A DNA stretch of 64,000 nucleotides from Epiperipatus broadwayi. Taxonomy: Eukaryota > Animalia > Onychophora. This document shows positions 1 to 64,000 of the stretch, in pieces (positions within the stretch are counted from its first letter, which is position 1; every line of letters begins with the position of its first letter). A program made the position numbers and the translations under genes. The DNA lies in NCBI GenBank assembly GCA_028023455.1, contig JAQFVV010000007.1, forward strand, positions 18,228,001 to 18,292,000. Reading direction: 5' to 3'. The notes beneath the pieces were generated by a model that saw nothing but the letters and a program-made list of their open reading frames with translations, was not told where the DNA came from and did no database searches.

Positions 1-300
1 TTGCACTGACTGCATTACTGCATGGAGAGTTGATGATATCAGTTTTAAACAGTAGCAAACTCTCCATGCGTAGTGTCATCTAGTGCAAACCATAGTAATC
101 AACGGATGCAAAAATCTTTATGCGTAAATCCCTATCAGATTCCTCACTGATGAAAACCACAAACTAGAAACTAGTCTTGGGATATTGGACAAGTAAGCAC
201 TAGATAGGGATTTTTGCAACACAACTTTTTACATCCATTGATCACCAAAGTTTGCATTGAGTGCACTAATGTATAGTGAGTTTGCTATTCTTTTAACAGA
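1..300. repeat. HHR-B family fold-back remnant; inverted segments flank a hammerhead motif
   Basis: 1-30 is the reverse complement of about 56-90, and about 100-137 is inverted relative to about 203-245. The sequence matches the HHR-B monomer at 2690-3685. Confidence 0.75.
141..182 (+). ncRNA. Hammerhead ribozyme motif, family B (stem II degenerate)
   Basis: TCCTCA-CTGATGA-AAACCACAAACTA-GAAA-CTAG-TC-TTGGGA. Core boxes and palindromic ACTAGT stem III are present; stem II pairing is largely lost relative to the 2794-2835 copy. Confidence 0.6.
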
Positions 301-1159
301 TTAGTAAGCATAGAAAATGTTGTTTGGGTGATGTTTTAGATATCAGTTTTGTAAAAGTTTTTTGTACAACCTGATTGACTAAAGTTATTGAAAATATAGC
401 CATCAAATGGCTACATCAAAGAAGATTTCTTTTGAGTCACATCCACTTCATATCTTAGAAGTTTATAGTAAGCACTTTGAACACATGATCATTAAAGATT
501 TACCTCAACTAACTCTATTTAGAATTTCCAGTGAAGTTACCCAACAATAGAAATAGAAACTTCTGTTTTCTAGTGAAATCATGCAGTGATTTGAAATTAG
601 AACTTTATGTAATAATATAGTGTTAGGTGGAATAGTTCATTATGTTTTGTGACATCTGAGCATTAAGTTCTGATTGCTACTCAATATTCTAATAATGTGG
701 ACTTAATTTGAAATGAACTATTATAAATTTAAACTATTACTGATATTGTTATGCTCAAATAAAGTTAAATTATGAATCTTGCATAGAAATCTATTCATAG
801 AACTAAGTCTGATTACATTGTTAAAAAAGACTAGAAATTTATTTGCATACTCATTTAAAATCGTTAAAATCTTGCATGTTTACATAAATAATAACCTGAT
901 CTGACTAACTACAATAATGAAAAGATAAGACATACTCTGTCTCAAGATGTTTTCTCAGTTTTTAACAATGATATTTCTCAGTTATTAACAATGACATTAT
1001 ATTATATCAATCATCATATATGCAAACAAAAAATTTCTAATGTAGCATTGTAAGGAGTAAGTCGAGATGTTTTATTTATATTAATAAAAAACATATATAT
1101 TGTATATAAATATTTGATCTACAGGCATTTTTATATATTTGGAGCTTAATTGTAAATAT

Positions 1160-1497
1160 AGGTGATTTGAACTCAGACTTTCAAGCACCCTTCAAGCTAT
1201 CCACACTATCTCATACCACTGATACACATGACCACACACATGTAGAAATGATAAATAATCACCAATACATGTATTTTGTGCTAAACCAGCACTTATCAGT
1301 TTGTCAAGATTATTAATTGAGCACTGATTATATCTATATGTGTGGGAGATGATAATCTGGACCAAATGATGAGGGCTGGTTCAGCACAAAATACATGTAT
1401 TGGTGATTATTTATGTTTTCTACATGTGTGTGGTCATGTGTATCAGTTGTATGAAATAGTAGTTGAAAGATGCTTGAAATTCTGAGTTCAAATCTCC
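1160..1497. repeat. Inverted dimer of the HHR-A (subtype A1) repeat, one degenerate hammerhead per arm
   Basis: About 1160-1310 is the reverse complement of about 1350-1497. Minus arm: CTGATAA-GTGCTGGTTTAGCAC-AAAA. Plus arm: ATGATGA-GGGCTGGTTCAGCAC-AAAA. Confidence 0.8.
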
Positions 1498-2793
1498 TAT
1501 ATATATATATTGTATATGTAATTATTTTTTTAAAGTGTTGTTTTCTTTTTCTTCATTAATTTTGGGTATCGTGAATAAAAAAATATATATATATATATAT
1601 TTTTTTAAATGTATTTAAAGGTCGAATACAAGATTTATTAATAGTGGCAAATAACATGCACACAATGATGGATCTGGGTTAAGTGTAATGGTTTACTATC
1701 AACACAGGTGCAACCTGTATACTGTTATAAATGTTAAAACTACATACCATTATAAATGGAAATCCGTCATACATTATAAATAGTGCACCAACTTAGGTTC
1801 AAACTATTAACTGTTATAATGTATATAATTAAAGAAACTCTTATTCAAATTAAATGCACTAAAAAGTAAAAAATAAATTTTCTTCCATTTTCACAGTGTT
1901 TTTGATATTATGTAACTAAAAATAAGTCATGGGATGCTTATGTTTAGAAACTGTTTAACATATATTTACAAGTTATACGTAAGTTATCATTTCATGATTT
2001 ATTCTTCTTGAGGTTATTAAAAATAAGTACTTAGAGGTTTTGCTTTAAAAAGTAAACTAATATCAAATTTATTATCATGAATATTTAAATAGAATGACTT
2101 TTATTGTTTCAAGTCTGAATTTATCACACGACTCTAACATAATTCCAACATACACATTGCTGTTTGAGGAGCAAGCTTTAGTAAATAATAGATGTCAAAT
2201 AATAGAGCTTAATAAATTTCTAAACTAGTGTCTAGTTTATGGAATTTATCAGTGAGGAGCTTTGTAACTTGGAAAAAGGCATTTGGGCCTTTAGGATCTA
2301 ATGCACATTCTTTCTGGAAGCCATAATTTACTCCTCTGTGATGTTAAGCTAAGATGAAAAGCATATGAATGTTTTCAATCTAAGCCAACATACTCATATA
2401 GTCATATAGATTTGAAACTATTTAGTATTTACATATTATAGTGTTGTTAATCTTTTAGCAACTATGGACATCTATATCCTGTGGCTTGGATTAGTATGAA
2501 ACCAATGAAGTGTCACATGACACTATCACATGACTCCAGCATACACATTAATGTTTCAGTAGCATACATTTTTTTAACTATTAGTTACTAAAGCTTCCAT
2601 TAGATGGCATAGCAGAGTTGAAAGAAAAAATGATGTTAAACCACTAAACATCATATGACCACCATCCCTTATGCTAGCACATAACTGTTATTAAACAGGC
2701 AAAACTCTCCATACAGTAGTGTCAACCAGAGTAATCAATGGATGCCAGAGGGCTTGTGCATAAAATTCCCATCTAGTGCTTACTCATCCAATA

Positions 2794-2835
2794 TCCCCAG
2801 ACTAGTTTCTGGCCTGTGGCCTTCATCAGTGAGGA
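2794..2835 (-). ncRNA. Minimal type-I hammerhead ribozyme, family B (best copy)
   Basis: Minus strand: TCCTCA CTGATGA A GGCC ACA GGCC A GAAA CTAG TC/TGGGGA. Stem I TCCTCA:TGGGGA, stem II GGCC:GGCC, palindromic stem III ACTAGT, GUC triplet with predicted cut between 2800 and 2799. Confidence 0.8.
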
Positions 2836-3529
2836 GCCTTGGATCTGAGAGCACTACATCTAGATCTTAGGATCCAATGCAACCTTCCAGCAGCCACCTT
2901 TTATTTCTAATTAACTACAAAACTATGAGAATGAAATTGAAAATACACAAATGTTTTCAATCTAAGCTAAATAGCTTATATAGTCATATGGGTCTGAACT
3001 CAATTCGGCACCCATACATTTTGCTGTCTTTGGCTCTTTAACAACCATAGCCACCACTATCCTATTAGGCAGGATTGGTGTTAAACCATTAAACATCACA
3101 TGATCACCATCTCTTATGCTAGCACATAACTGTTATTAAACAGGCAAAACTCCATACAGTAGTGGCATCCATTGATTACTCTTGTTGGCACAGGGTGATA
3201 CTACTGTATGAAGAGTTTTACATATTTAATAACAGTTATGTGCTAGCATAAGAGATGTTGATCATGTGATGTTTAGTGGTTTAACATCAATCCTGCCTAA
3301 TAGGATAGTGGTGGCTATGGTTATTAAAGAACCAAAGACACCAAAATGTATGGGTGCTGAATTGAGTTCAGACCCATATGACTATATAAGCTATTGAGCT
3401 TAGATTTAAAATATTTGTATGTTTTCAATTTCATTCTCATAGTTTTGTAGTTAAGTAGAGATAACAGATGGCTGCTGGAGGGTTGCATTGGATTTTAAGA
3501 TCTAGGTGCAGTGCTCTCAGATCCAAGGT

Positions 3530-3571
3530 TCCTCACTGACAAAGACCACATGCCAGAAACTAGTCTGGGGA
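3530..3571 (+). ncRNA. Degenerate hammerhead, family B
   Basis: TCCTCA CTGACAA AGACCACATGCCA GAAA CTAGTC TGGGGA. The CUGAUGA box is mutated, so it is probably inactive. Confidence 0.6.
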
Positions 3572-5040
3572 TATCAGATGAGTAGGCACTAGATACGGAT
3601 TTTATGCACAAGCCTTCTGGCATCCATTGATTACTCTGATTAGCACAGGGTGGCACTACTGTATGGAGAGTTTTGCCTGTTTAAAAAATAATGTCTGAAT
3701 TTGTTTTTATATATACATATAAGATTTAGTAGGTAACCCAAGAGATATTTTTTTGGTGGCAAAAAAATAATTTGGCCATTAACACTTCTGAAATTTTACC
3801 ACGCTCTTTTTGTGAAGGGTATTTTGCATGATCTGGTATTTATTAAAACTACATTATCATATGTATAATATTTATAACCTTATAATCTATCACCAGGTTT
3901 TTGGAATATTACAAGTACATATATTGCTAATATTAAACCATAAATGCACATAAATAATTGGTTATCATATGTTAATCGCATAACCCCAGCCAATGCTAAA
4001 AATTACTCAATAGAATATCATCAATCTATTATCAGAGCAACACTCAGACAAAATTTTCATTTATTATTTCTGTGTTATCATGACAATAGATTACTGATAT
4101 TCTTCAGGTTAATTTTAAGTATTGGCTGGGTGGTTTAGAGAAGCATTAATGGTGAGAGAACTGGGTTGCATTGTAAGAACCTTGATCTCTAGAGCATACC
4201 TCTGCACTAATCCATTCAAGGAATTAAAAAATAAATGCAAACTCATATCAACAAATAGCAATTATTTTAATATTAATTATATACTACATCCAAGTAGAAG
4301 TACCTGTTACTATGTTGTTTCAACCTGCATTGGAGACAAAAACTTAACACATCTTGTAAATTCAGTTTATAGTAACTCATCTTTAATTCTTGATCTTATT
4401 TGTGTTATTGCATAATCAAGAAAAAATCTATTTCAATACTTTAAATATTAGAATTTTTTTCTTTTAACTAAAAAATAGTGTATCTGTTTGTCCACATTAG
4501 TAGGTGATGCCAGTTTAAAATTGACTTCTGGCCTTTATAGAAATGACATTCACTACCTTAGTATAATCTATTATCTACTTAATTTATCAGGCTGTTCAGT
4601 ACAACAATTATTATAATGATCATAAAGCCTACCTATCTTATTGCTAGTCATAGATCAATTTTACTACTAGCCAAAGAGGCAAATCTTAAATCAAGATCTT
4701 CTTTCTGAATATTCAATCAAGGAACTTTTCAATTCACTGAAAAATAATGGCATAAAAATATGTTTTGTGTGTGGCACCAACCAAATTTCATGTCCCATAT
4801 TCAATATTAAAATTAGCTGGATTAAATCTTTCTAAACATTATTGAAGCCTAGTAAGCAAATAGAGAAAGCACTCATGGTTACTATGATATAATAAATCAA
4901 AATATAAATTGAAACAAATGTTTTTAATGAAAGAATTGATTTTTAGATGATTAGCACTGTTTTTAATTAGCTTTAAATAAATTATTTAATTCATTAAAAT
5001 CAGTTGAATTCTGTGTTTATTTTTAAATATCACTTTTGTT

Positions 5041-37633: not shown

Positions 37634-37737
37634 CTACTAAACATCACATGATCACCATTCCCTAAAACTCTCTTGCCGACATTGCTTATTTATTCTGGCT
37701 TGCACCATGTGGCACTAGTATATGAAGAGTTTTACCT
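37634..37737. repeat. HHR-B fold-back remnant forming the 5' flank of the LINE insertion
   Basis: AAACATCACATGATCACCAT... and GGCACTAGTATATGAAGAGTTTTACCT match the palindrome centre at 3085-3225. Confidence 0.7.
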
Positions 37738-40700
37738 CTAGGAAGACAAGAATGGATGGTAGCTATAGTGTATATAGCTACTGGAGATAGTCAAACTATA
37801 ATGGAGTGGAACAGTAGCATATATGAATGCCTAGTTAAGGATATACAGAGTTTCAAAGAAAAGAGAAAGAGAATAATGGTTATAGGAGATATGAATGGGC
37901 ATATTGAAGAAATTGATGATGTAGGTGATAAGAATGGGCAACCTTTGAAGAATTTTTGTCAGAGTAAATTTGAGCATTGAAAATGTATCAAATATTTATG
38001 AGCAACAATACACATGATCTAGAAATAATATATTCCACACAATATATTATGTATTAGTAGAGAAAGAGGGAATGAATAAAGTACAGAAAATTAAGGGGTT
38101 TGATAATAAAGAGAGAGTATATAATAGTGATTATAACTTCTTTATAATAGAAATGGTTAGTAATGTGATGGAAAATAGAAATAAAAGTAGAAATGATAGT
38201 GAAAGATGTGGATGGAGGGTGAATGATAAGAATAAGTTAGAAGAGTATAAAATAAAAGTTGAAGAAACCATGGAAGAGTTGGTTGGGGATAAATATAAGG
38301 ACCGGTCTGGTGTAATAGAAAATGTGGCAAATATGGTTTTAGGTGAGAATATTCAGAAGAATAAAAGTAATAAAAAAGTGAGAGTTAGTAAAAGTGTAAA
38401 AGAGAGGAAAAAGCATGCAAAGAATATATGTGTGCTATTAAGAACAAAGAAAATGAAAAGGATGTTAATGTTAAATGAGAAAAGTACTTAGAAAAAAAGA
38501 AGTTGGCTAAGATAGATAATTAGAGAGAGAATGAAATTGAATAGTCAATTGTTGGAGGATATTAATAATAGTGGAAGAGATGAAAAAAATTTTTTGGAAA
38601 TACATTAAAAGAAGGAATGTATGAGAGAGAGAGAGAGAGATAGTATTACTAGATTATGATGGAGTAGAGAGTAGCTCTAGAGAAGAATTAGAGATGATAT
38701 TAAATAAGTATGTAATGGATATAGAAAAGATGTTAGATGTGAAGGACAGAGTGATAGCAAACATGAAAGCATGTAGTAATGGGAATATAGGTTTACAGAA
38801 ATTGAACTGAATGAGGCAGGGAATAAATTAAAAAGTGGAAAGGCAAGAGGTTTAGATGGATGAGCAGCAAAGATGGTAATGAATTCAGGGCATAGGGCAA
38901 AAGTAAAATTATTATTGTGTTTTAATCAACTAGCACAGAAAGAGAGTTTTTCCTGGTAGTTGGAGTAATACAAGAGTAAGGCTACTATTTAAAGGAAAGG
39001 ATCAGGATCATAGGAAGTTAAACAATTATGGACTGATAGCGGTAACATCAGTTTTATATAAAGTTTTTTTGATATGATGGCTGGAAGAGTTGCAAAATGG
39101 ATGGAATAGGAGATAGTTTATTTGTTGTTACACAACTTATGGATAGTTTATTTGTTGTTACACAACTTATGGATATGAGTAGGTATACAGGTAGATAGTT
39201 ATATATGGTTTTTATAGATATAGAAAAGGCATATGATAGAGTAAATAGAAATAGATTATGGATAAGTTTAATAAATTTGAGAATGGATGGAGCTTTAGTG
39301 GATATTATTAAGAAATTATATGAAAATAATTATTATATGTATTAATTAGTGAATATAGAATCAGTTAAAGTTAAAAATGGGTGGGACTAAGGTAAGGATA
39401 TCCTCTGTCACCTATTTTGTTTTGTTGTATTTGAGAGAAATAGAGACAGCAATAGAAAGATTAGGAAGAGGGATAGAGATACCATTAATAGGCAGCAAGG
39501 GACTATGTACATTATCTGGTCTTATTTGCAGATGATGTCTTTTTGTATGCAAAAAGAAGGGAAGATATGGAAGTTATGCTGAGGACATGCAGAAGAATAG
39601 GTAAAGAAATGGGGATTAAGTTTAGTGAAGAAAAATCAAAAGTAATGATGTTTAATTCTGGGGAAAGAGAAGACAGAGAATTTTTATTGGGGAATGTAAA
39701 GTTAAGTGCAGTGAATAGATATAACTATTTGGGAATCATCTTAATTAATCAGAAAAATTGGTTGGATACATGGGGAAAAAAAAGATAAATGAAGCAAAGA
39801 AAAGAAAGGGATTGATAAAGAAATTAACAGTGTTTTCATATAATAAATATGACGTAGCTAGAACTGTTTGGAAGGGAATGGTGGTAGCAGGGTTAATGAT
39901 ACATTATGTGCTAGTAAAGGGCTATTAGATTACTTGGAAAAAGTACAAAGAGAAGTAGGAAGACATGCACAGCAAAAGAGGCAATTCAAGGAAAAATGGG
40001 ATGGTCAAGTTTTTATATGAGGGATGTAAAAAGCAAAATGAAAATATTCGGTAGATTGCAGTTTATGAATAATAAAAGAATAGCCAAAATTGTATTTAAT
40101 TGGGTTATGAATAAAGGGCAGGTAATAAGATGGGTGAGGAAGGTAATGTGATATGCAGAAGATTTGGATAAAGAATACTTGTACAAAAGTATATTTGTAC
40201 AAAAGGTGGGATGATTGTGTTAGGAAAATTGTTCAGTGTTGTAGTGGTAAGGAATAGGATAGAAGAATAGATGCATTAATAAAGAATAGAGAGTTGGAGA
40301 GATAGAAAACTAGTATGGAGAGTAAAAGAGTTTATGGAATATTAGGTGCAAGTTAATTTATGATAATAGCAAGGAAAGTAGTTTACTGTTTAAGGCTCGA
40401 ACGGGATCTTTAGCAACAGGGGATTATACACGTAAGTGGAAAAACGTGGGTGATTTAGTCTGCAAGTTGTGTAAGGAAGGCATAGAAAATATTAGGCATT
40501 TGTTTATTAAATGTAAATGTTTGAAAGCAGAAAGGATTCAAATAATAAAGTTATGGAAGAATAAATATAAAGAAAGTGATTATACAGAAAGTGGGTTATT
40601 GATTTTTATGCTGGGTTTGGGGAAAAGGAGTTAGATATGAAGGCCATGGAGTTGACAAAGATTATGTTGTGGAAATGGAATTGAGCAGGATATGAGAAAA

Positions 40701-40810
40701 ACTTAGGGTGGAGAATGGAAAGGTAAGGTATAGTGGCTAACAGGTTTCTCTGGGCATTGTTGCTGAGAGATTCCTGACTCAGTATAAGGTGAAAGTGCAT
40801 CACATTACAT
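37738..40810 (+). mobile_element. 5'-truncated APE-RT non-LTR retrotransposon (clade uncertain, possibly RTE-X-like), decayed
   Basis: APE motif RIMVIGDMNGHI; RT motifs VRLLFKGK, FIDIEKAYDRVNR, G.PLSPILF and the (L)FADD region; C-terminal LFKARTGSL...CKLCKEGIENIRHLFIKC; ends in a CATCACATTACAT tail. Many stops and frameshifts. Confidence 0.88.
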
Positions 40811-41471
40811 CTGTTTATAAAGATTTTATTTAGAATTGTAATTTTTAATATATTTTTAAATATCTTTCTTAAATATCAATGCCAGTATGGCATTTTATCC
40901 AGTCATCTGATATTTCTTTATCAATTAGACATTTCATATATATATAGTTTTGCCAATAATTTTTGTATTTCTTCATCTACTTCTTTTAGCATATCAATAA
41001 TAATTCCATTATTTACTGGCGCTTTTTTCTTTCATTACTTTAACTGTATATCTCAGTTTTTAGATTTTTTTTTTTGGTATTTCCCAAAGTGTTGTAAATA
41101 TAAGAGTCACTGTCTTTTTATGTTCTTTATTACTATATAATTCTTTCTAGAATTCTTCCTCAATGTCATCCATTTTTTTAAATAACTTTTATATTTTCTT
41201 CTTATTGCTAAAACAATTTTCCTTCCAACACCAAATGTTCTTTATACTTTTGTTCTCTTCTATATATAATTTTTTATTCCAATTCATAGTTACATTTTCT
41301 ATATCATTATTAACCCGTTTTCAGATGTTTACCTTCAGATATCCAGTTATTTTTAATGTATCACTTAAAAATATTTTCATTTTTTTCTTCTTCATACATT
41401 ATTTTATTTCAGTTGAAGTTGAAACTTTCACCAAGTAATTTTATTTTCACCATTTTTTTTTTTTTTTTTAG

Positions 41472-61649: not shown

Positions 61650-62310
61650 AAATGGACATTAAGATGAAAACTATGGGCATGTTTGAAAATATATATAGCA
61701 TTTCTTCTGTATAATTACTGCATAAGACCCATGTGGGTTTAAGATATAGCTTGAATCCATTAATGGAAAACATTTTAATTGGAATTTTAATCCCATCTGG
61801 TCATTTGTAATGCAGCAAAATTTCAAATCAAGTATCCACTTGATTTTAAAAGTCATCACTAGCATCAATAGTTAAAAATTACAGAAAACATGTGAACTGA
61901 ATAATTCTGATCTTCACTTTTTAAAATGTCTAGACAACTTTTCCAGATTTTTTATTGCAATTCTGCTATGTATATTATATTTTATCCAAACGTTTCAGAG
62001 CCATTTTAATATTGTGCAAACCAATATCTTTTATCAAAAGACAACTGTTATAAATTTCTGTATAAAAAGTAAATGCAGATATGTGTTATATATTAATCAG
62101 AGTAATATTAGAGTTAACAACAGTTGTTACTAATTATTAAGCAAAAGTACTTAATCATATTTGTAGAAAGACAATTAGTTAAAAAAAAACAGCTACCACA
62201 ACAATTAGAAAATCTTTTACTCGCACCATAGTTGTGCCACCAACTGTAAGTTTTACTAACCAATAAATGCCAGATAGTAATGTTTAATAAATTCCTCACC
62301 TGTGCCATCC
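61650..62310 (-). mobile_element. LTR-retrotransposon integrase remnant
   Basis: YSWWHNY...FSNCCGSC resembles the N-terminal zinc domain and CITNDQMGLKFQ resembles the I-x-x-DQG-x-x-F core. Heavily decayed. Confidence 0.45.
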
Positions 62311-62384
62311 TATCTAATGTCTCTAGACTAATTTCTAGTTATAGCTTTAATTAGCACTGGTTAAAAATTTATTAAAGTCTGGAG

Positions 62385-62973
62385 ATAATGCATGAGTAGG
62401 CACTAGATAGGGATTTTATGCACAAATCATCTTGCATCCACTGATTACTATGGCTTGCACTGGATGTCACTACTAAATGGAAAGTTTTTCACTAACAGGT
62501 TTCTCTGGGCATAGTGGCCGAGAGATTTCTGACTTCAATACAAGGAGAAGCCACAATACATCACATCATTGTTTTAACAACTTGTTTAAGCATAGAAAAT
62601 GGTGATTATGTGCTATTTAGAGGATTAATATTTCTGTCCATGGAATGATGATGACTAAGGTTATTAAAGAACCAAAGACAACAAAATGTAGATACTGAAT
62701 TGGGTTCAGATCAATATGACTTTACAAGTGAATGAGCTTGGATTGAAAACATGGTTTTTTTTTTGACTCATTTTAACTAAAAATGTGGCTACTGGAGAGT
62801 TGTATTAGATCCTAAAATCTAAGTGCTATGCTCTCACATCCAAGGCTCCTCACTAATGAAAGCTACAAGCTAGAAATTATTCAGGAGTTTTTGAAGAGTA
62901 TGCACTACATAGGGATTTTATGCACAAACCTTCTATGGCTGGCACTGGATGGCAGTATTGTATGCAGAATTTG
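62385..62973 (+). repeat. Tandem HHR-B monomers; degenerate hammerhead at about 62847-62886
   Basis: GATAGGGATTTTATGCACAA recurs at about 62407 and 62908. Motif TCCTCA CTAATGA AAGCTACAAGCTA GAAA TTATTC AGGAG. Confidence 0.8.
62490..62568 (+). mobile_element. About 80-bp 3'-terminal piece of the APE-RT LINE inserted in an HHR-B monomer
   Basis: CTAACAGGTTTCTCTGGGCAT...ACATCACATCA matches 40737-40810, with HHR-B sequence continuing on both sides. Confidence 0.8.
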
Positions 62974-62978
62974 TTTTT

Positions 62979-64000
62979 GATAAATGAAGCAAAGAAAAGA
63001 AAGGGACTGATAAAAAAATTAATAGTGTTTCATATAAAAATATGATGTAGCTAGAATTATATGGTAGCGGCAGTAGCAGGGTTAACATATGGTAAAGATA
63101 CATTATGTGTTAGTAAAGGAAGGTTAGATTACTTAGAAAAAGTACAAAAAGAAGTAAAAAGACATGCATTAGATGCAGATGTAAGGACAACAAAGGATGC
63201 AATTCAAGGAGAGATGGGATGCCAAATTTTTATATGAGATGCAAAATGAAAATGTTCAGTAGATTGCAATTTATGGATAATAAGAGAATAGCCAAAACAG
63301 TATCTAATTGGGTTATGAATAAAGGGCAGGCAACAAGATGGATGAGAAAGGTAGTATGGTATGCAAAAGATTTGGATAAAAAAATTTTGTCAGTATACTT
63401 ATACAAAAGGTGGAATGATTGTGTTAGGAGAATTGTTGGGGATTGTAGTGGCAAGGAATGTAATAGAAAAATAGATGCATTAATAAAAAATAGGGAGGTG
63501 GAGAGATGGAGAACTAGTATGGAAAGTAAAAATAGTTTAACTATACTGTATATAGAATTAAACAGAATATTGGTGCAAGTTAATTTATGATAATAGCAAT
63601 GAAAGTAGTTTACTGTTTAAGGCTCTATCAGGATCTTTAGTAACAAGGGAATATACACATAAATGTAAAAATATGGGTGATATTTAGTCTGCAAGTTATG
63701 TAGGGAAGGCATAGAAAATATTAGGCATATGTTAATTGAATGTAAATGCCTGAAAGCAGAAAGGGTACAGATAATGAAGTTGTGGAAGAATAAATATGAA
63801 CAAAGTGATTATACAGAAAGTGAGTTCTTGGTTTTTATATTGGGTTTTGGAAAAGATAAGGGTGATTTAGATATAAAGGCCATAAAATTGACAAAGATTG
63901 TTATGGAAATGGGATGGAGCAGGGTAGAGAAGAATATGGGAAAAACTTTAGAATGGGGAATGGAAAGGGAAGGTAAGGTGGCTAACAGATTTCTCTGGGC
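62979..64000 (+). mobile_element. 5'-truncated copy of the APE-RT LINE, running off the window end
   Basis: Aligns to 39785-40755, including the C-terminal CKLC...H...C region. Confidence 0.9.

What the first reader, a model, noticed from the sequence alone, without database searches (positions are those of the whole stretch)
62385..62640. Insertion 2 of 3: an 80-bp LINE tail splits an HHR-B monomer with both target halves intact
Seen: upstream GTCACTACTAAATGGAAAGTTTTT, then LINE 3' end 62490-62568, then TTGTTTTAACAACTTGTTTAAGCATAGAAAATGGTGATTATGTG. Removing the insert restores the HHR-B consensus across about 60 nt. This is the cleanest empty-site reconstruction. An extreme 5' truncation with a precise 3' junction is what target-primed reverse transcription produces.
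Basis: seen in the sequence. Interest (0 to 1): 0.75.

Follow-up and report, generated by a model that had tools for sequence, protein, structure and literature searches.

The report
LINE tail inside hammerhead repeat, copied along
A 79-letter end piece of a common jumping gene (a LINE) sits at that gene's favourite landing spot in a self-cutting-RNA repeat, but this copy did not land here: it was carried in as part of a 1.7-kb patchwork found at two other places in this animal genome.

Summary
Window 62490-62568 is the extreme 3' end of an abundant, decayed LINE with an APE-type endonuclease and a reverse transcriptase. It splits a ~455-nt repeat ("HB") that carries a Penelope-type hammerhead. 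With the piece removed, the flanks are collinear with uninterrupted HB joints; about 3 nt are missing here and none in the oldest paralogue.

The site recurs genome-wide. About 380 exact LINE-tail/HB joints were found against 0 for the control pattern. About 10% of older HB joints are filled, and 4 of 29 sampled LINE tails abut the site. The orientation is fixed. The 3' joint is fixed, while the 5' joint scatters with microhomology, 0-4 nt duplications or small deletions. LINE pieces differ in length. This pattern fits target-primed reverse transcription into a preferred DNA site better than RNA template switching.

The site lies 109 nt from the predicted ribozyme cut, and Rfam does not call the hammerhead.

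New point: this copy was not made in place. The mosaic 62376-64062 (HB arm, tail, HB unit, 1.1-kb LINE) recurs at two other loci with identical internal joints, and the shared sequence ends exactly at the second LINE's tail. "Insertions 2 and 3" are therefore one linked passenger.

The scan had noted this LINE/HB association before (s1-177589, s1-174394). It is a new target for a known kind of behaviour. I do not take the contig for human.

The parts
62192..62354 (-). Inverted HB arm (consensus 23 back through 450 to 312), with an uninterrupted 450/1 joint. Together with a direct HB arm that starts 854 nt beyond the window end, it probably forms the host HB element into which the mosaic was inserted.
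   Evidence: Local alignment to the reverse-complemented HB dimer scores 89, against a maximum of 58 for 30 shuffles. The arm shares subfamily variants with the HB piece beyond the window end and not with the mosaic's own HB arm.
62376..62489 (+). HB arm, consensus 338-450. It is the left half of the split joint and the 5' end of the 1.7-kb mosaic shared with two other loci.
   Evidence: BLAST to the HB consensus gives 85% identity. Homology to C7146 and C6292 starts at 62376.
62490..62568 (+). The finding itself: a 79-nt (79-82) 3' end of the LINE, family positions ~3001-3077, ending in the (CATCA)n-type tail.
   Evidence: up to 92% identity to genomic LINE tails that are preceded by LINE coding sequence.
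62496..62531 (+). Conserved three-part stem-loop of the LINE 3' UTR (11 base pairs), retained whole in the 79-nt piece. It is the likely recognition element for the element's reverse transcriptase (inference).
   Evidence: RNAalifold on 50 tails: every pair forms a standard pair in 44-50 of 48-50 sequences. One pair changes on both sides (CG to AU) in 6 sequences, and three pairs show GC, GU and AU.
62569..62975 (+). Full HB unit (consensus ~453 round to 450), the right half of the split joint. Its hammerhead region (~62845-62888) is inactivated by core changes (CUGAUGA to CUAAUGA, GAAAC to GAAAU).
   Evidence: with the motif definition.
62976..64000 (+). Second LINE fragment ('LINE b', family positions 2050-3077). 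It is joined to HB at the same consensus position 450 and runs 62 nt past the window end. Its tail is the common 3' boundary of all three mosaic copies.
37735..40811 (+). The window's longest copy of the same LINE, used as the coordinate reference. It has a weak endonuclease hit, an RVT_1 hit and a zf-RVT hit. HB consensus 407-450 lies directly upstream; only ~9 HB-like nt lie downstream.
3163..3690 (+). In-window HB copies of the younger subfamily with uninterrupted 450/1 joints (at about 3215-3235 and 3670-3690). These are empty-site references.
   Evidence: 89-95% identity to the consensus.

Best explanation
The 79-nt segment is the 3' end of an abundant, now decayed LINE that has an APE-type endonuclease, a reverse transcriptase and a C-terminal zinc-knuckle-like motif. 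Its 3' UTR carries a conserved stem-loop and ends in a (CATCA)n-type tail.

The segment lies, in the same orientation, between consensus positions ~452 and ~453 of a ~455-nt non-coding repeat (HB). HB carries a Penelope-type minimal type-I hammerhead.

The LINE family strongly prefers this one HB position. Most likely its machinery nicks the bottom DNA strand 2-3 nt before TGTTT(T/A)A and primes reverse transcription there. The upstream end is then joined by microhomology within ~25 nt of the break. This gives a fixed 3' joint, a ragged 5' joint, 0-4 nt duplications or small deletions, and LINE pieces truncated at different points.

The event recorded at 62490-62568 happened once, in an ancestral HB array that later also received a second LINE fragment at the next HB joint. 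A transcript running through HB, tail, HB and the second LINE was then copied as a unit by LINE machinery, using the second LINE's 3' end. This gave at least three copies. The window copy is the shortest; it lies between an inverted and a direct arm of another HB element.

Shown: the identities of the parts, the recurrence, the geometry of the joints, the orientation bias and the shared mosaic.

Inferred: the endonuclease as the source of specificity, the read-through transcript, and the order of events.
For: Identity of the parts:
- The tail matches LINE 3' ends that follow LINE coding sequence.
- Pfam finds Exo_endo_phos_2 or Exo_endo_phos, RVT_1 and a weak zf-RVT hit.
- There are over 28,000 first-look candidates for one 139-aa fragment, and none scored has an open frame above 495 aa.
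- The hammerhead motif is intact in 36 of 46 young units, with a 6-bp helix I in 30 and the palindromic CUAG loop in 30.

Site preference:
- The exact pattern tail + 0-14 nt + TGTTTTAACAG gives 484 hits (about 380 distinct) against 0 for the reversed control.
- The empty-joint pattern gives 3,274 hits against 6. That is about 10% filled, matching 2 of 20 sampled older joints.
- 4 of 29 unselected LINE tails abut HB ~453.
- The opposite orientation gives 3 hits.
- The younger HB variant is also hit (86 raw hits), and the joint there keeps the host's own C or CC.

DNA-level insertion:
- Of 13 filled sites from the pattern sample whose LINE 5' end is visible, 11 have HB directly upstream (9 directly abutting; in L099 and L116 a short stretch between the HB BLAST hit and the LINE start was read as HB by eye).
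- The HB end scatters from ~430 to ~456, with microhomologies (GTGGC, TGGA, ATGG).
- L096 has a 4-nt duplication (TACT) and L100 a 3-nt one (TAT). L007 lost ~18 nt.
- LINE start points all differ (about 2294 to 3017).

Passenger status:
- Searches show the shared mosaic and its boundaries.
- Divergence is uniform across all four segments: 89-91% to C7146 and 79-85% to C6292. The 91% for the 79-nt tail against C6292 may be an alignment to that copy's other LINE tail.
- The downstream flanks of the three copies are unrelated.
Against: - Only about 14% of sampled LINE tails lie at the HB site. The other 3' flanks show no TGTTTTAA-like motif, so a simple sequence-specific endonuclease does not explain the whole family.
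- Some copies have HB only on the 5' side: window 37735-40811, L006, and the second LINE of the mosaic. I explain these as re-mobilised chimeric transcripts, but template switching would also produce them.
- Tail-to-LINE tandems are common (L006, L013 and L030, and in the window's own continuation beyond its end), which shows that joining of RNAs or repeated insertion at tails occurs in this family.
- No clear target-site duplications could be found for non-HB insertions or for the three mosaic copies, so retrotransposition of the mosaic rests on its boundaries alone.
- C7146 and C6292 also share at least 800 nt upstream. This could be a segmental duplication rather than a longer retrocopy.
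- No intact LINE copy was found, and the LINE clade was not determined.
Confidence: 0.68

Rival explanations
1. RNA-level chimera. The LINE's reverse transcriptase, on reaching the end of a LINE RNA, jumps to the 3' end of an HB RNA, and from the 5' end of an HB RNA to a LINE tail. The HB-LINE-HB order is then assembled during one retrotransposition, as in U6/L1 chimeras. It is not an insertion into HB DNA.
For: - A T-run (consensus 447-450) sits just before the joint and could end a Pol III-type transcript.
- Copies with HB only on the 5' side exist.
- LINE-to-LINE tail joints are frequent.
- The window locus is a chain HB-LINE-HB-LINE-LINE-HB.
Against: - Both joints fall at the same DNA position in 11 of 13 sampled cases.
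- Five upstream HB ends run past the T-run into the next 2-6 nt, and two cases duplicate 3-4 nt. A fixed RNA end cannot give that.
- 5' joints as far back as consensus ~430 use microhomology.
- The joint is neither the predicted hammerhead cleavage site (341/342) nor the usual HB element end (~58-62).
- The window's own filled joint is followed by a full HB unit, not by the terminal HB piece.
- The bases retained at the 3' joint follow the host HB subfamily.
Confidence: 0.17
2. Homing guided by co-transcribed target sequence rather than by the endonuclease. LINE copies already resident in HB are transcribed with some downstream HB sequence. That extension pairs with nicked HB DNA elsewhere and sets the 3' joint, as has been proposed for R1, R2 and similar elements. 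This is a variant of DNA-level insertion that differs only in what confers specificity.
For: - It would explain why only a minority of tails are at HB and why other flanks lack a motif.
- Two tails are followed by just ~9 HB-like nt and then unrelated DNA (L002 and window 40812-40820). That fits short read-through.
- The idea is stated for other target-specific LINEs in PMC4494074.
Against: - Upstream HB ends never extend more than ~4 nt past the 3' joint. Both strand breaks therefore lie at the site itself, which a free choice of nick within the homologous stretch would not give.
- The retained bases match the host subfamily.
Confidence: 0.2
3. The 79-nt piece is simply a fixed internal module of an HB subfamily and was never an insertion.
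For: The same piece with the same joints occurs at three loci.
Against: - Those three are copies of one 1.7-kb mosaic, not of an HB subfamily.
- About 90% of comparable joints are empty.
- Filled joints carry LINE pieces of many lengths and from several LINE subfamilies.
- The piece is 88-92% identical to tails of coding LINE copies.
Confidence: 0.03

Closest known systems
Tx1-clade LINEs that insert into other transposons (Tx1L into the Tx1D piggyBac derivative in Xenopus; crocodilian 'Tx1-Mar' families into Mariner-N4_AMi), as summarised in PMC4494074
   Same: An APE-type LINE that lands preferentially at one position of another multicopy mobile element, in a fixed orientation, with 5'-truncated copies.
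   Different: The target here is a non-coding retroelement (a Penelope-type hammerhead retrozyme), not a DNA transposon. Only about 14% of sampled copies are at the target. Clade membership was not established: the endonuclease matches PF14529 best, and solved L1 endonuclease structures were not hit.
R2 and R1 in 28S rDNA; Keno and Utopia in U2 snRNA genes
   Same: A precise 3' joint with variable 5' joints carrying small deletions or duplications. Possible dependence on transcription from the target. Chimeric target-LINE transcripts that are copied again.
   Different: Those elements are almost exclusively at their target, and their targets are host genes. R2 uses a restriction-like endonuclease.
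U6/L1 and other template-switch chimeric retrocopies
   Same: A small structured RNA-derived sequence joined head-to-tail to a 5'-truncated LINE. This resembles the copies here that have HB on the 5' side only.
   Different: In most cases here HB continues on the 3' side from the same position, and the 5' joints do not sit at one RNA end.
LINE 5' transduction, and SINE birth from target-LINE read-through (SINEU; PMC4494074)
   Same: The 1.7-kb mosaic behaves like a LINE 3' end carrying upstream foreign sequence: a shared 3' boundary and different 5' extents.
   Different: Only three copies were found. No evidence was obtained that HB supplies the promoter.
Metazoan non-LTR retrozymes and the Penelope-like element pLTR hammerhead (PMC7229834; bioRxiv 10.64898/2026.07.22.740005)
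   Same: HB is a ~455-nt AT-rich tandem or dispersed repeat with a type-I hammerhead. The hammerhead has the 1-bp helix III with a palindromic loop, which I recall from memory as typical of Penelope-like elements (the source I read says only that they carry rare minimal type-I variants). Copies show 5' inverted arms and terminal redundancy.
   Different: Rfam hammerhead models do not score it. Cleavage and circular RNAs are untested here.

Membership tests
LINE (APE-type non-LTR retrotransposon), 3' end fragment | Sequence identity to the 3' end of elements that encode an APE endonuclease and a reverse transcriptase | tested here: met
   (tails preceded by coding sequence). (PF14529 or PF03372, and PF00078).
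LINE (APE-type non-LTR retrotransposon), 3' end fragment | Common 3' end with variable 5' truncation among copies | tested here: met
   start points run from about 1 to 3017 on the reference copy, and all end in the same tail.
LINE (APE-type non-LTR retrotransposon), 3' end fragment | Target-site duplications flanking insertions | tested here: inconclusive
   No clear duplications at non-HB sites. At HB sites there are 0-4 nt duplications or small deletions.
Target-site-specific LINE (R1, R2 or Tx1-like behaviour) | Independent insertions at one nucleotide position of a repeated target, in a fixed orientation | tested here: met
   about 380 exact joints against 0 control hits; different truncation points; 3 hits in the opposite orientation.
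Target-site-specific LINE (R1, R2 or Tx1-like behaviour) | The great majority of the family's copies reside in the target | tested here: not met
   4 of 29 sampled tails are at the site. The other flanks are unrelated and lack the motif.
Target-site-specific LINE (R1, R2 or Tx1-like behaviour) | Phylogenetic placement in a known target-specific clade (Tx1, R1, etc.) | not tested
   Only decayed fragments were available. PDB and Atlas look-ups did not resolve the clade.
Hammerhead ribozyme, type I, Penelope-type minimal variant (the 'HHR' in HHR-B) | Conserved core CUGANGA ... GAAA, cleavable H17, helices I and II, short helix III | tested here: met
   Consensus 305-347. The motif is intact in 36 of 46 units, with a 6-bp helix I in 30 and the CUAG loop in 30. 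Helix II closes with U-A in one variant.
Hammerhead ribozyme, type I, Penelope-type minimal variant (the 'HHR' in HHR-B) | Match to a curated covariance model (Rfam hammerhead families) | tested here: not met
   No hammerhead hit at the gathering score or at E<=10, in the window copies or in young genomic copies.
Hammerhead ribozyme, type I, Penelope-type minimal variant (the 'HHR' in HHR-B) | Self-cleavage activity; circular RNA products | not testable with these tools
   Needs in vitro transcription and cleavage, plus RNA data.
Template-switch chimera (U6/L1 type) | Partner sequence ends at its RNA 3' end at the joint, and is absent 3' of the LINE | tested here: not met
   HB ends scatter over 430-456, and HB resumes 3' of the LINE in 11 of 13 cases. 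A minority of 5'-only cases do exist.

The most novel reading that the evidence does not exclude
The LINE and the Penelope-derived hammerhead repeat form a working partnership. The LINE homes to one spot downstream of the repeat's transcribed or ribozyme region. Truncated, promoter-less LINE ends are then expressed from the repeat. The resulting repeat-LINE chimeras are copied again by LINE machinery. This would be cross-mobilisation between two unrelated retroelement classes, and a live example of how a ribozyme-headed SINE could arise.
Probability: 0.2. Interest if true: 0.6.

Novelty: new member of a known kind. Interest (0 to 1): 0.38.

Why it matters
LINEs that aim at rDNA, snRNA genes, microsatellites or DNA transposons are known. 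One that favours a single position in a hammerhead retrozyme has not been described in what I could search. The paper searches were general ones and were not aimed at that combination.

The data provide:
- a natural set of hundreds of independent events at one sequence, useful for studying how a LINE chooses and repairs its target;
- an occupancy figure of about 10% of older joints;
- a caution for repeat annotation: filled sites can themselves be copied as passengers, so counting "insertions" in one window overstates the number of independent events.

The finding does not touch a long-standing open question, and the scan had already noted the association twice.

Tried and rejected
- **Rfam.** Searches of the whole window at the gathering score, two HB regions at E<=10, ten young HB loci at the gathering score, and one young copy at E<=10 gave no hammerhead. 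The only hits were spurious miRNA-like hairpins caused by inverted HB arms. The hammerhead therefore rests on motif analysis.
- **Joint at the ribozyme cut site or HB element end.** Rejected. Cleavage is predicted at consensus 341/342 and elements end at ~58-62, while the joint is at ~452/453.
- **Target-site duplications for 18 non-HB LINE copies.** Nothing convincing was found, and the 5' boundaries are too imprecise.
- **A short endonuclease motif (TGTTTTAA-like) in non-HB flanks.** No enrichment: mean best match 4.7 of 8, against 4.9 in control positions.
- **Base-pairing between the LINE tail RNA and the HB site.** Marginal (z about -2.5 for one strand, 1.7% of shuffles) and not pursued. 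That script used a 78-nt tail consensus typed from the output.
- **LINE clade.** PDB sequence search gave only generic L1 and R2 reverse-transcriptase hits and bacterial ExoIII for the endonuclease. The protein atlas gave unnamed reverse-transcriptase clusters. I ran no further search on this.
- **A first search with the upstream flank of C7146.** It was swamped by a nested HB copy and was repeated without it.
- **A second batch of 20 filled sites.** All 12 own-genome searches are used.
- **Consensus building.** I built a consensus only for the non-coding HB repeat, plus a column consensus of the 92-nt LINE tail alignment.

Full report
**Setting**

The window is AT-rich (about 27-35% G+C in most 2-kb bins). 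It belongs to a 5.6-Gb animal assembly and corresponds to G000:C7:18228001-18292000. I do not take it for human. It is full of Penelope-type hammerhead repeats, and a 2026 preprint reports such retrozymes to be absent from mammals.

**1. The observation**

The quoted sequences are at the stated coordinates. The 79 nt at 62490-62568 match the end of the window's own 3.1-kb LINE copy (40737-40811, 82%) and the start of a third tail at the window's end.

Genome-wide, the 79 nt have 942 first-look candidates. The best 39 other matches are 88-95% identical, and nearly all are preceded by LINE coding sequence.

That LINE encodes an APE-type endonuclease (PF14529 or PF03372), a reverse transcriptase (PF00078) and a weak C-terminal zf-RVT match. 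It is extremely abundant: 28,317 candidates for one 139-aa piece. Every scored copy is broken, with open frames of at most 495 aa.

**2. The repeat it splits**

From 46 young genomic units (about 92% identical to one another) I built an HB consensus of ~455 nt.

HB elements have the Penelope-style anatomy: a 5' inverted arm, one or more direct units, and an end at consensus ~58-62.

Consensus 305-347 holds a type-I hammerhead with these parts:
- a 6-bp helix I;
- the CUGAUGA core;
- a 3-4-bp helix II;
- GAAA;
- a 1-bp helix III capped by the palindromic loop CUAG;
- predicted cleavage after C341.

The motif is intact in 36 of 46 units. [quoted passage not shown] Rfam does not score the motif at any threshold I tried, so "HHR" is a motif-level call.

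In the window copies next to the finding, the core is mutated.

**3. Collinearity**

Window 62376-62488 equals consensus 338-450, and 62589-62934 equals consensus 21-394.

I aligned the window with the insert removed against ten uninterrupted joints of the older HB subfamily. The two halves meet between GAGTTT(T) and TGTTTT, and the window lacks about 3 nt of the variable 4-5-mer that lies between them.

In the most diverged paralogue (C6292) the joint reads tail-TAC-TGTTT. Together with the upstream ...GTTTGT, this leaves nothing missing and nothing duplicated. The ancestral event was therefore essentially blunt. The joint is 109 nt downstream of the predicted ribozyme cut.

**4. Recurrence across the genome**

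| Measure | Result |
|---|---|
| Unselected LINE tails followed by HB from ~453 | 4 of 29 (L007, L018, L019, L027); each also has HB up to ~443-450 directly before the LINE |
| Older HB joints, sampled by their downstream 64 nt only, that carry a LINE tail | 2 of 20 |
| Exact pattern: tail + 0-14 nt + TGTTTTAACAG | 484 hits (about 380 distinct), 0 for the reversed control |
| Exact pattern: empty joint | 3,274 hits, 6 for the control |
| Opposite orientation | 3 hits |
| Younger HB variant (…TGTTTAATAAC) | 86 raw hits |

The pattern counts imply that roughly 10% of such joints are filled. In the younger HB variant the joint keeps the host's own C or CC, so the bases retained at the joint come from the target.

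**5. Geometry of independent events**

I fetched 20 filled sites from the pattern hits. In 13 of them the LINE 5' end is visible, and 11 of those have HB directly upstream (9 directly abutting; in L099 and L116 a short stretch between the HB BLAST hit and the LINE start was read as HB by eye).

- The LINE start points all differ (about 2294, 2317, 2520, 2600, 2603, 2688, 2936, 2999, 3009, 3017 and 3017 on the reference copy).
- The two copies starting at 3017 have different HB joints.
- The HB end scatters from consensus ~430 to ~456.
- Microhomologies at the joint include GTGGC, TGGA and ATGG.
- L096 duplicates TACT and L100 duplicates TAT.
- L007 lost about 18 nt of target on the 3' side.

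A fixed 3' joint with a ragged, microhomology-mediated 5' joint close to the break, together with strict orientation, is the classical footprint of target-primed reverse transcription into DNA.

**6. Template switching as the rival**

It would need HB RNA ends at 450 and 453. It cannot explain HB ends that run past the T-run, or the small duplications. I therefore rate it the weaker model.

It is not excluded, for three reasons:
- Copies with HB only on the 5' side exist (window 37735-40811, L006, and the second LINE of the mosaic).
- LINE-to-LINE tail joints are common.
- Only about 14% of tails are at HB, and the other flanks show no shared motif.

A variant in which co-transcribed HB sequence guides homing also remains open.

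**7. This copy is a passenger (the new point)**

A query spanning the 5' joint (HB|tail) matched two other loci over its full length: C7146 at 91% and C6292 at 86%.

Homology to both runs from 62376 to 64062. This covers the HB arm, the 79-nt tail, a full HB unit, and a second LINE fragment (family positions 2050-3077) joined at the same HB position. It stops exactly at that LINE's tail.

- Divergence is uniform across the four segments: 89-91% to C7146 and 79-85% to C6292.
- The three downstream flanks are unrelated.
- C7146 and C6292 share at least 800 nt more upstream, a stretch otherwise unique in the genome.
- The window's upstream flank is different.

A shared 3' end with different 5' extents is what LINE-mediated copying of a chimeric read-through transcript would give. 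A segmental duplication for the C7146/C6292 pair cannot be excluded.

**8. How the mosaic sits in the window**

- The mosaic is followed by a third LINE fragment (positions 2297-3077), lying 63-853 nt beyond the window end. After that comes a direct HB arm starting at consensus ~362.
- Upstream of the mosaic lies an inverted HB arm at 62192-62354. Its alignment scores 89 against a shuffle maximum of 58, and it contains an uninterrupted 450/1 joint.
- The two outer arms share subfamily variants with each other and differ from the mosaic's own HB.
- The 2.5-kb block therefore probably lies inside another HB element.

Consequences:
- The companion prediction that an HB half follows the third LINE fails.

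**9. What the 79 nt contain**

Fifty aligned tails share an 11-bp, three-part stem-loop. Each of its pairs forms a standard pair in 44-50 of the 48-50 sequences with both letters (at least 88%), with one doubly compensated pair.

The stem-loop lies at 62496-62531 and is complete in the fragment. Truncations at ~2995-3017 cluster at or in this structure. This suggests that the reverse transcriptase pauses there, and it means that even these stubs keep the probable recognition element (inference).

**10. Comparison with known systems**

LINEs that prefer a site in another mobile element are known. Examples are Tx1L in Tx1D and crocodilian Tx1 families in Mariner-N4 (PMC4494074). The joint geometry resembles that of R1 and R2.

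The differences here are the target (a hammerhead retrozyme), the partial rather than exclusive preference, and the re-copying of filled sites.

The earlier follow-up s1-177589 reached the homing reading from the window alone. My genome-wide data support that reading, but they show that its three window cases are not three independent landings.

**Verdict**

The feature is real and the mechanism is ordinary. The target is new for a known behaviour, and interest is moderate to low.

Noticed in passing
window 64001+ (locus L073 1-1200 = G000:C7:18292001-18293200): The second LINE's tail is followed directly by a third LINE fragment starting at family position ~2297. After that fragment's tail comes HB from consensus ~362 to 450.
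   Followed up: yes
LINE family positions ~2292-2328 (e.g. window 63235-63260; L009, L012, L013, L030, L103, L116): Many LINE copies begin within a ~35-nt stretch around ...GCAAAATGAAAATG, and tail-to-LINE tandems start there too. This suggests a discrete ~785-nt subgenomic RNA end, an internal start, or a strong reverse-transcriptase stop. A second cluster of 5' ends lies near ~2600.
   Followed up: partly
window 40812-40820 and L002 1577-1586: Two LINE tails are followed by only ~9 nt that match the HB site (TGTTTATAA, CTGTTTTAA) and then by unrelated DNA. This would fit short 3' read-through from an HB-resident source copy.
   Followed up: no
L014 877-1291 and L015 149-1123: The reverse nesting also occurs. 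Young HB elements (93-96% identical to the consensus) are inserted into LINE copies, with ~10 nt of LINE sequence repeated on both sides. This is a target duplication typical of the HB element's own machinery.
   Followed up: no
window 3091-3277: Rfam reports a sub-threshold 'MIR4387' hairpin (56 bits, gathering score 84). It is only the long perfect hairpin formed by an inverted and a direct HB arm, so it is an artefact of the element's anatomy.
   Followed up: yes
L094 (C7146) reverse-strand coordinates 1546-1770, compared with L095 (C6292): One of the two longer mosaic copies carries a nested HB insertion that the other lacks. HB was therefore still active after the mosaic was duplicated.
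   Followed up: partly
L094:2854-2937 (positions 43-126 of the query L094:2556-2979 on the reverse strand): An ~85-nt stretch of the otherwise two-copy upstream flank matches dozens of loci at 79-94% identity. It is an unidentified short dispersed repeat.
   Followed up: no
HB consensus 451-455 (window ~3222-3226 and ~3679-3683): The 4-5 nt between GAGTTT(T) and TGTTT differ by HB subfamily (GCC, GCCTC, GCTAC, GCTAT, GTTAT) and are more variable than their surroundings. The LINE joint falls inside this small variable patch.
   Followed up: partly
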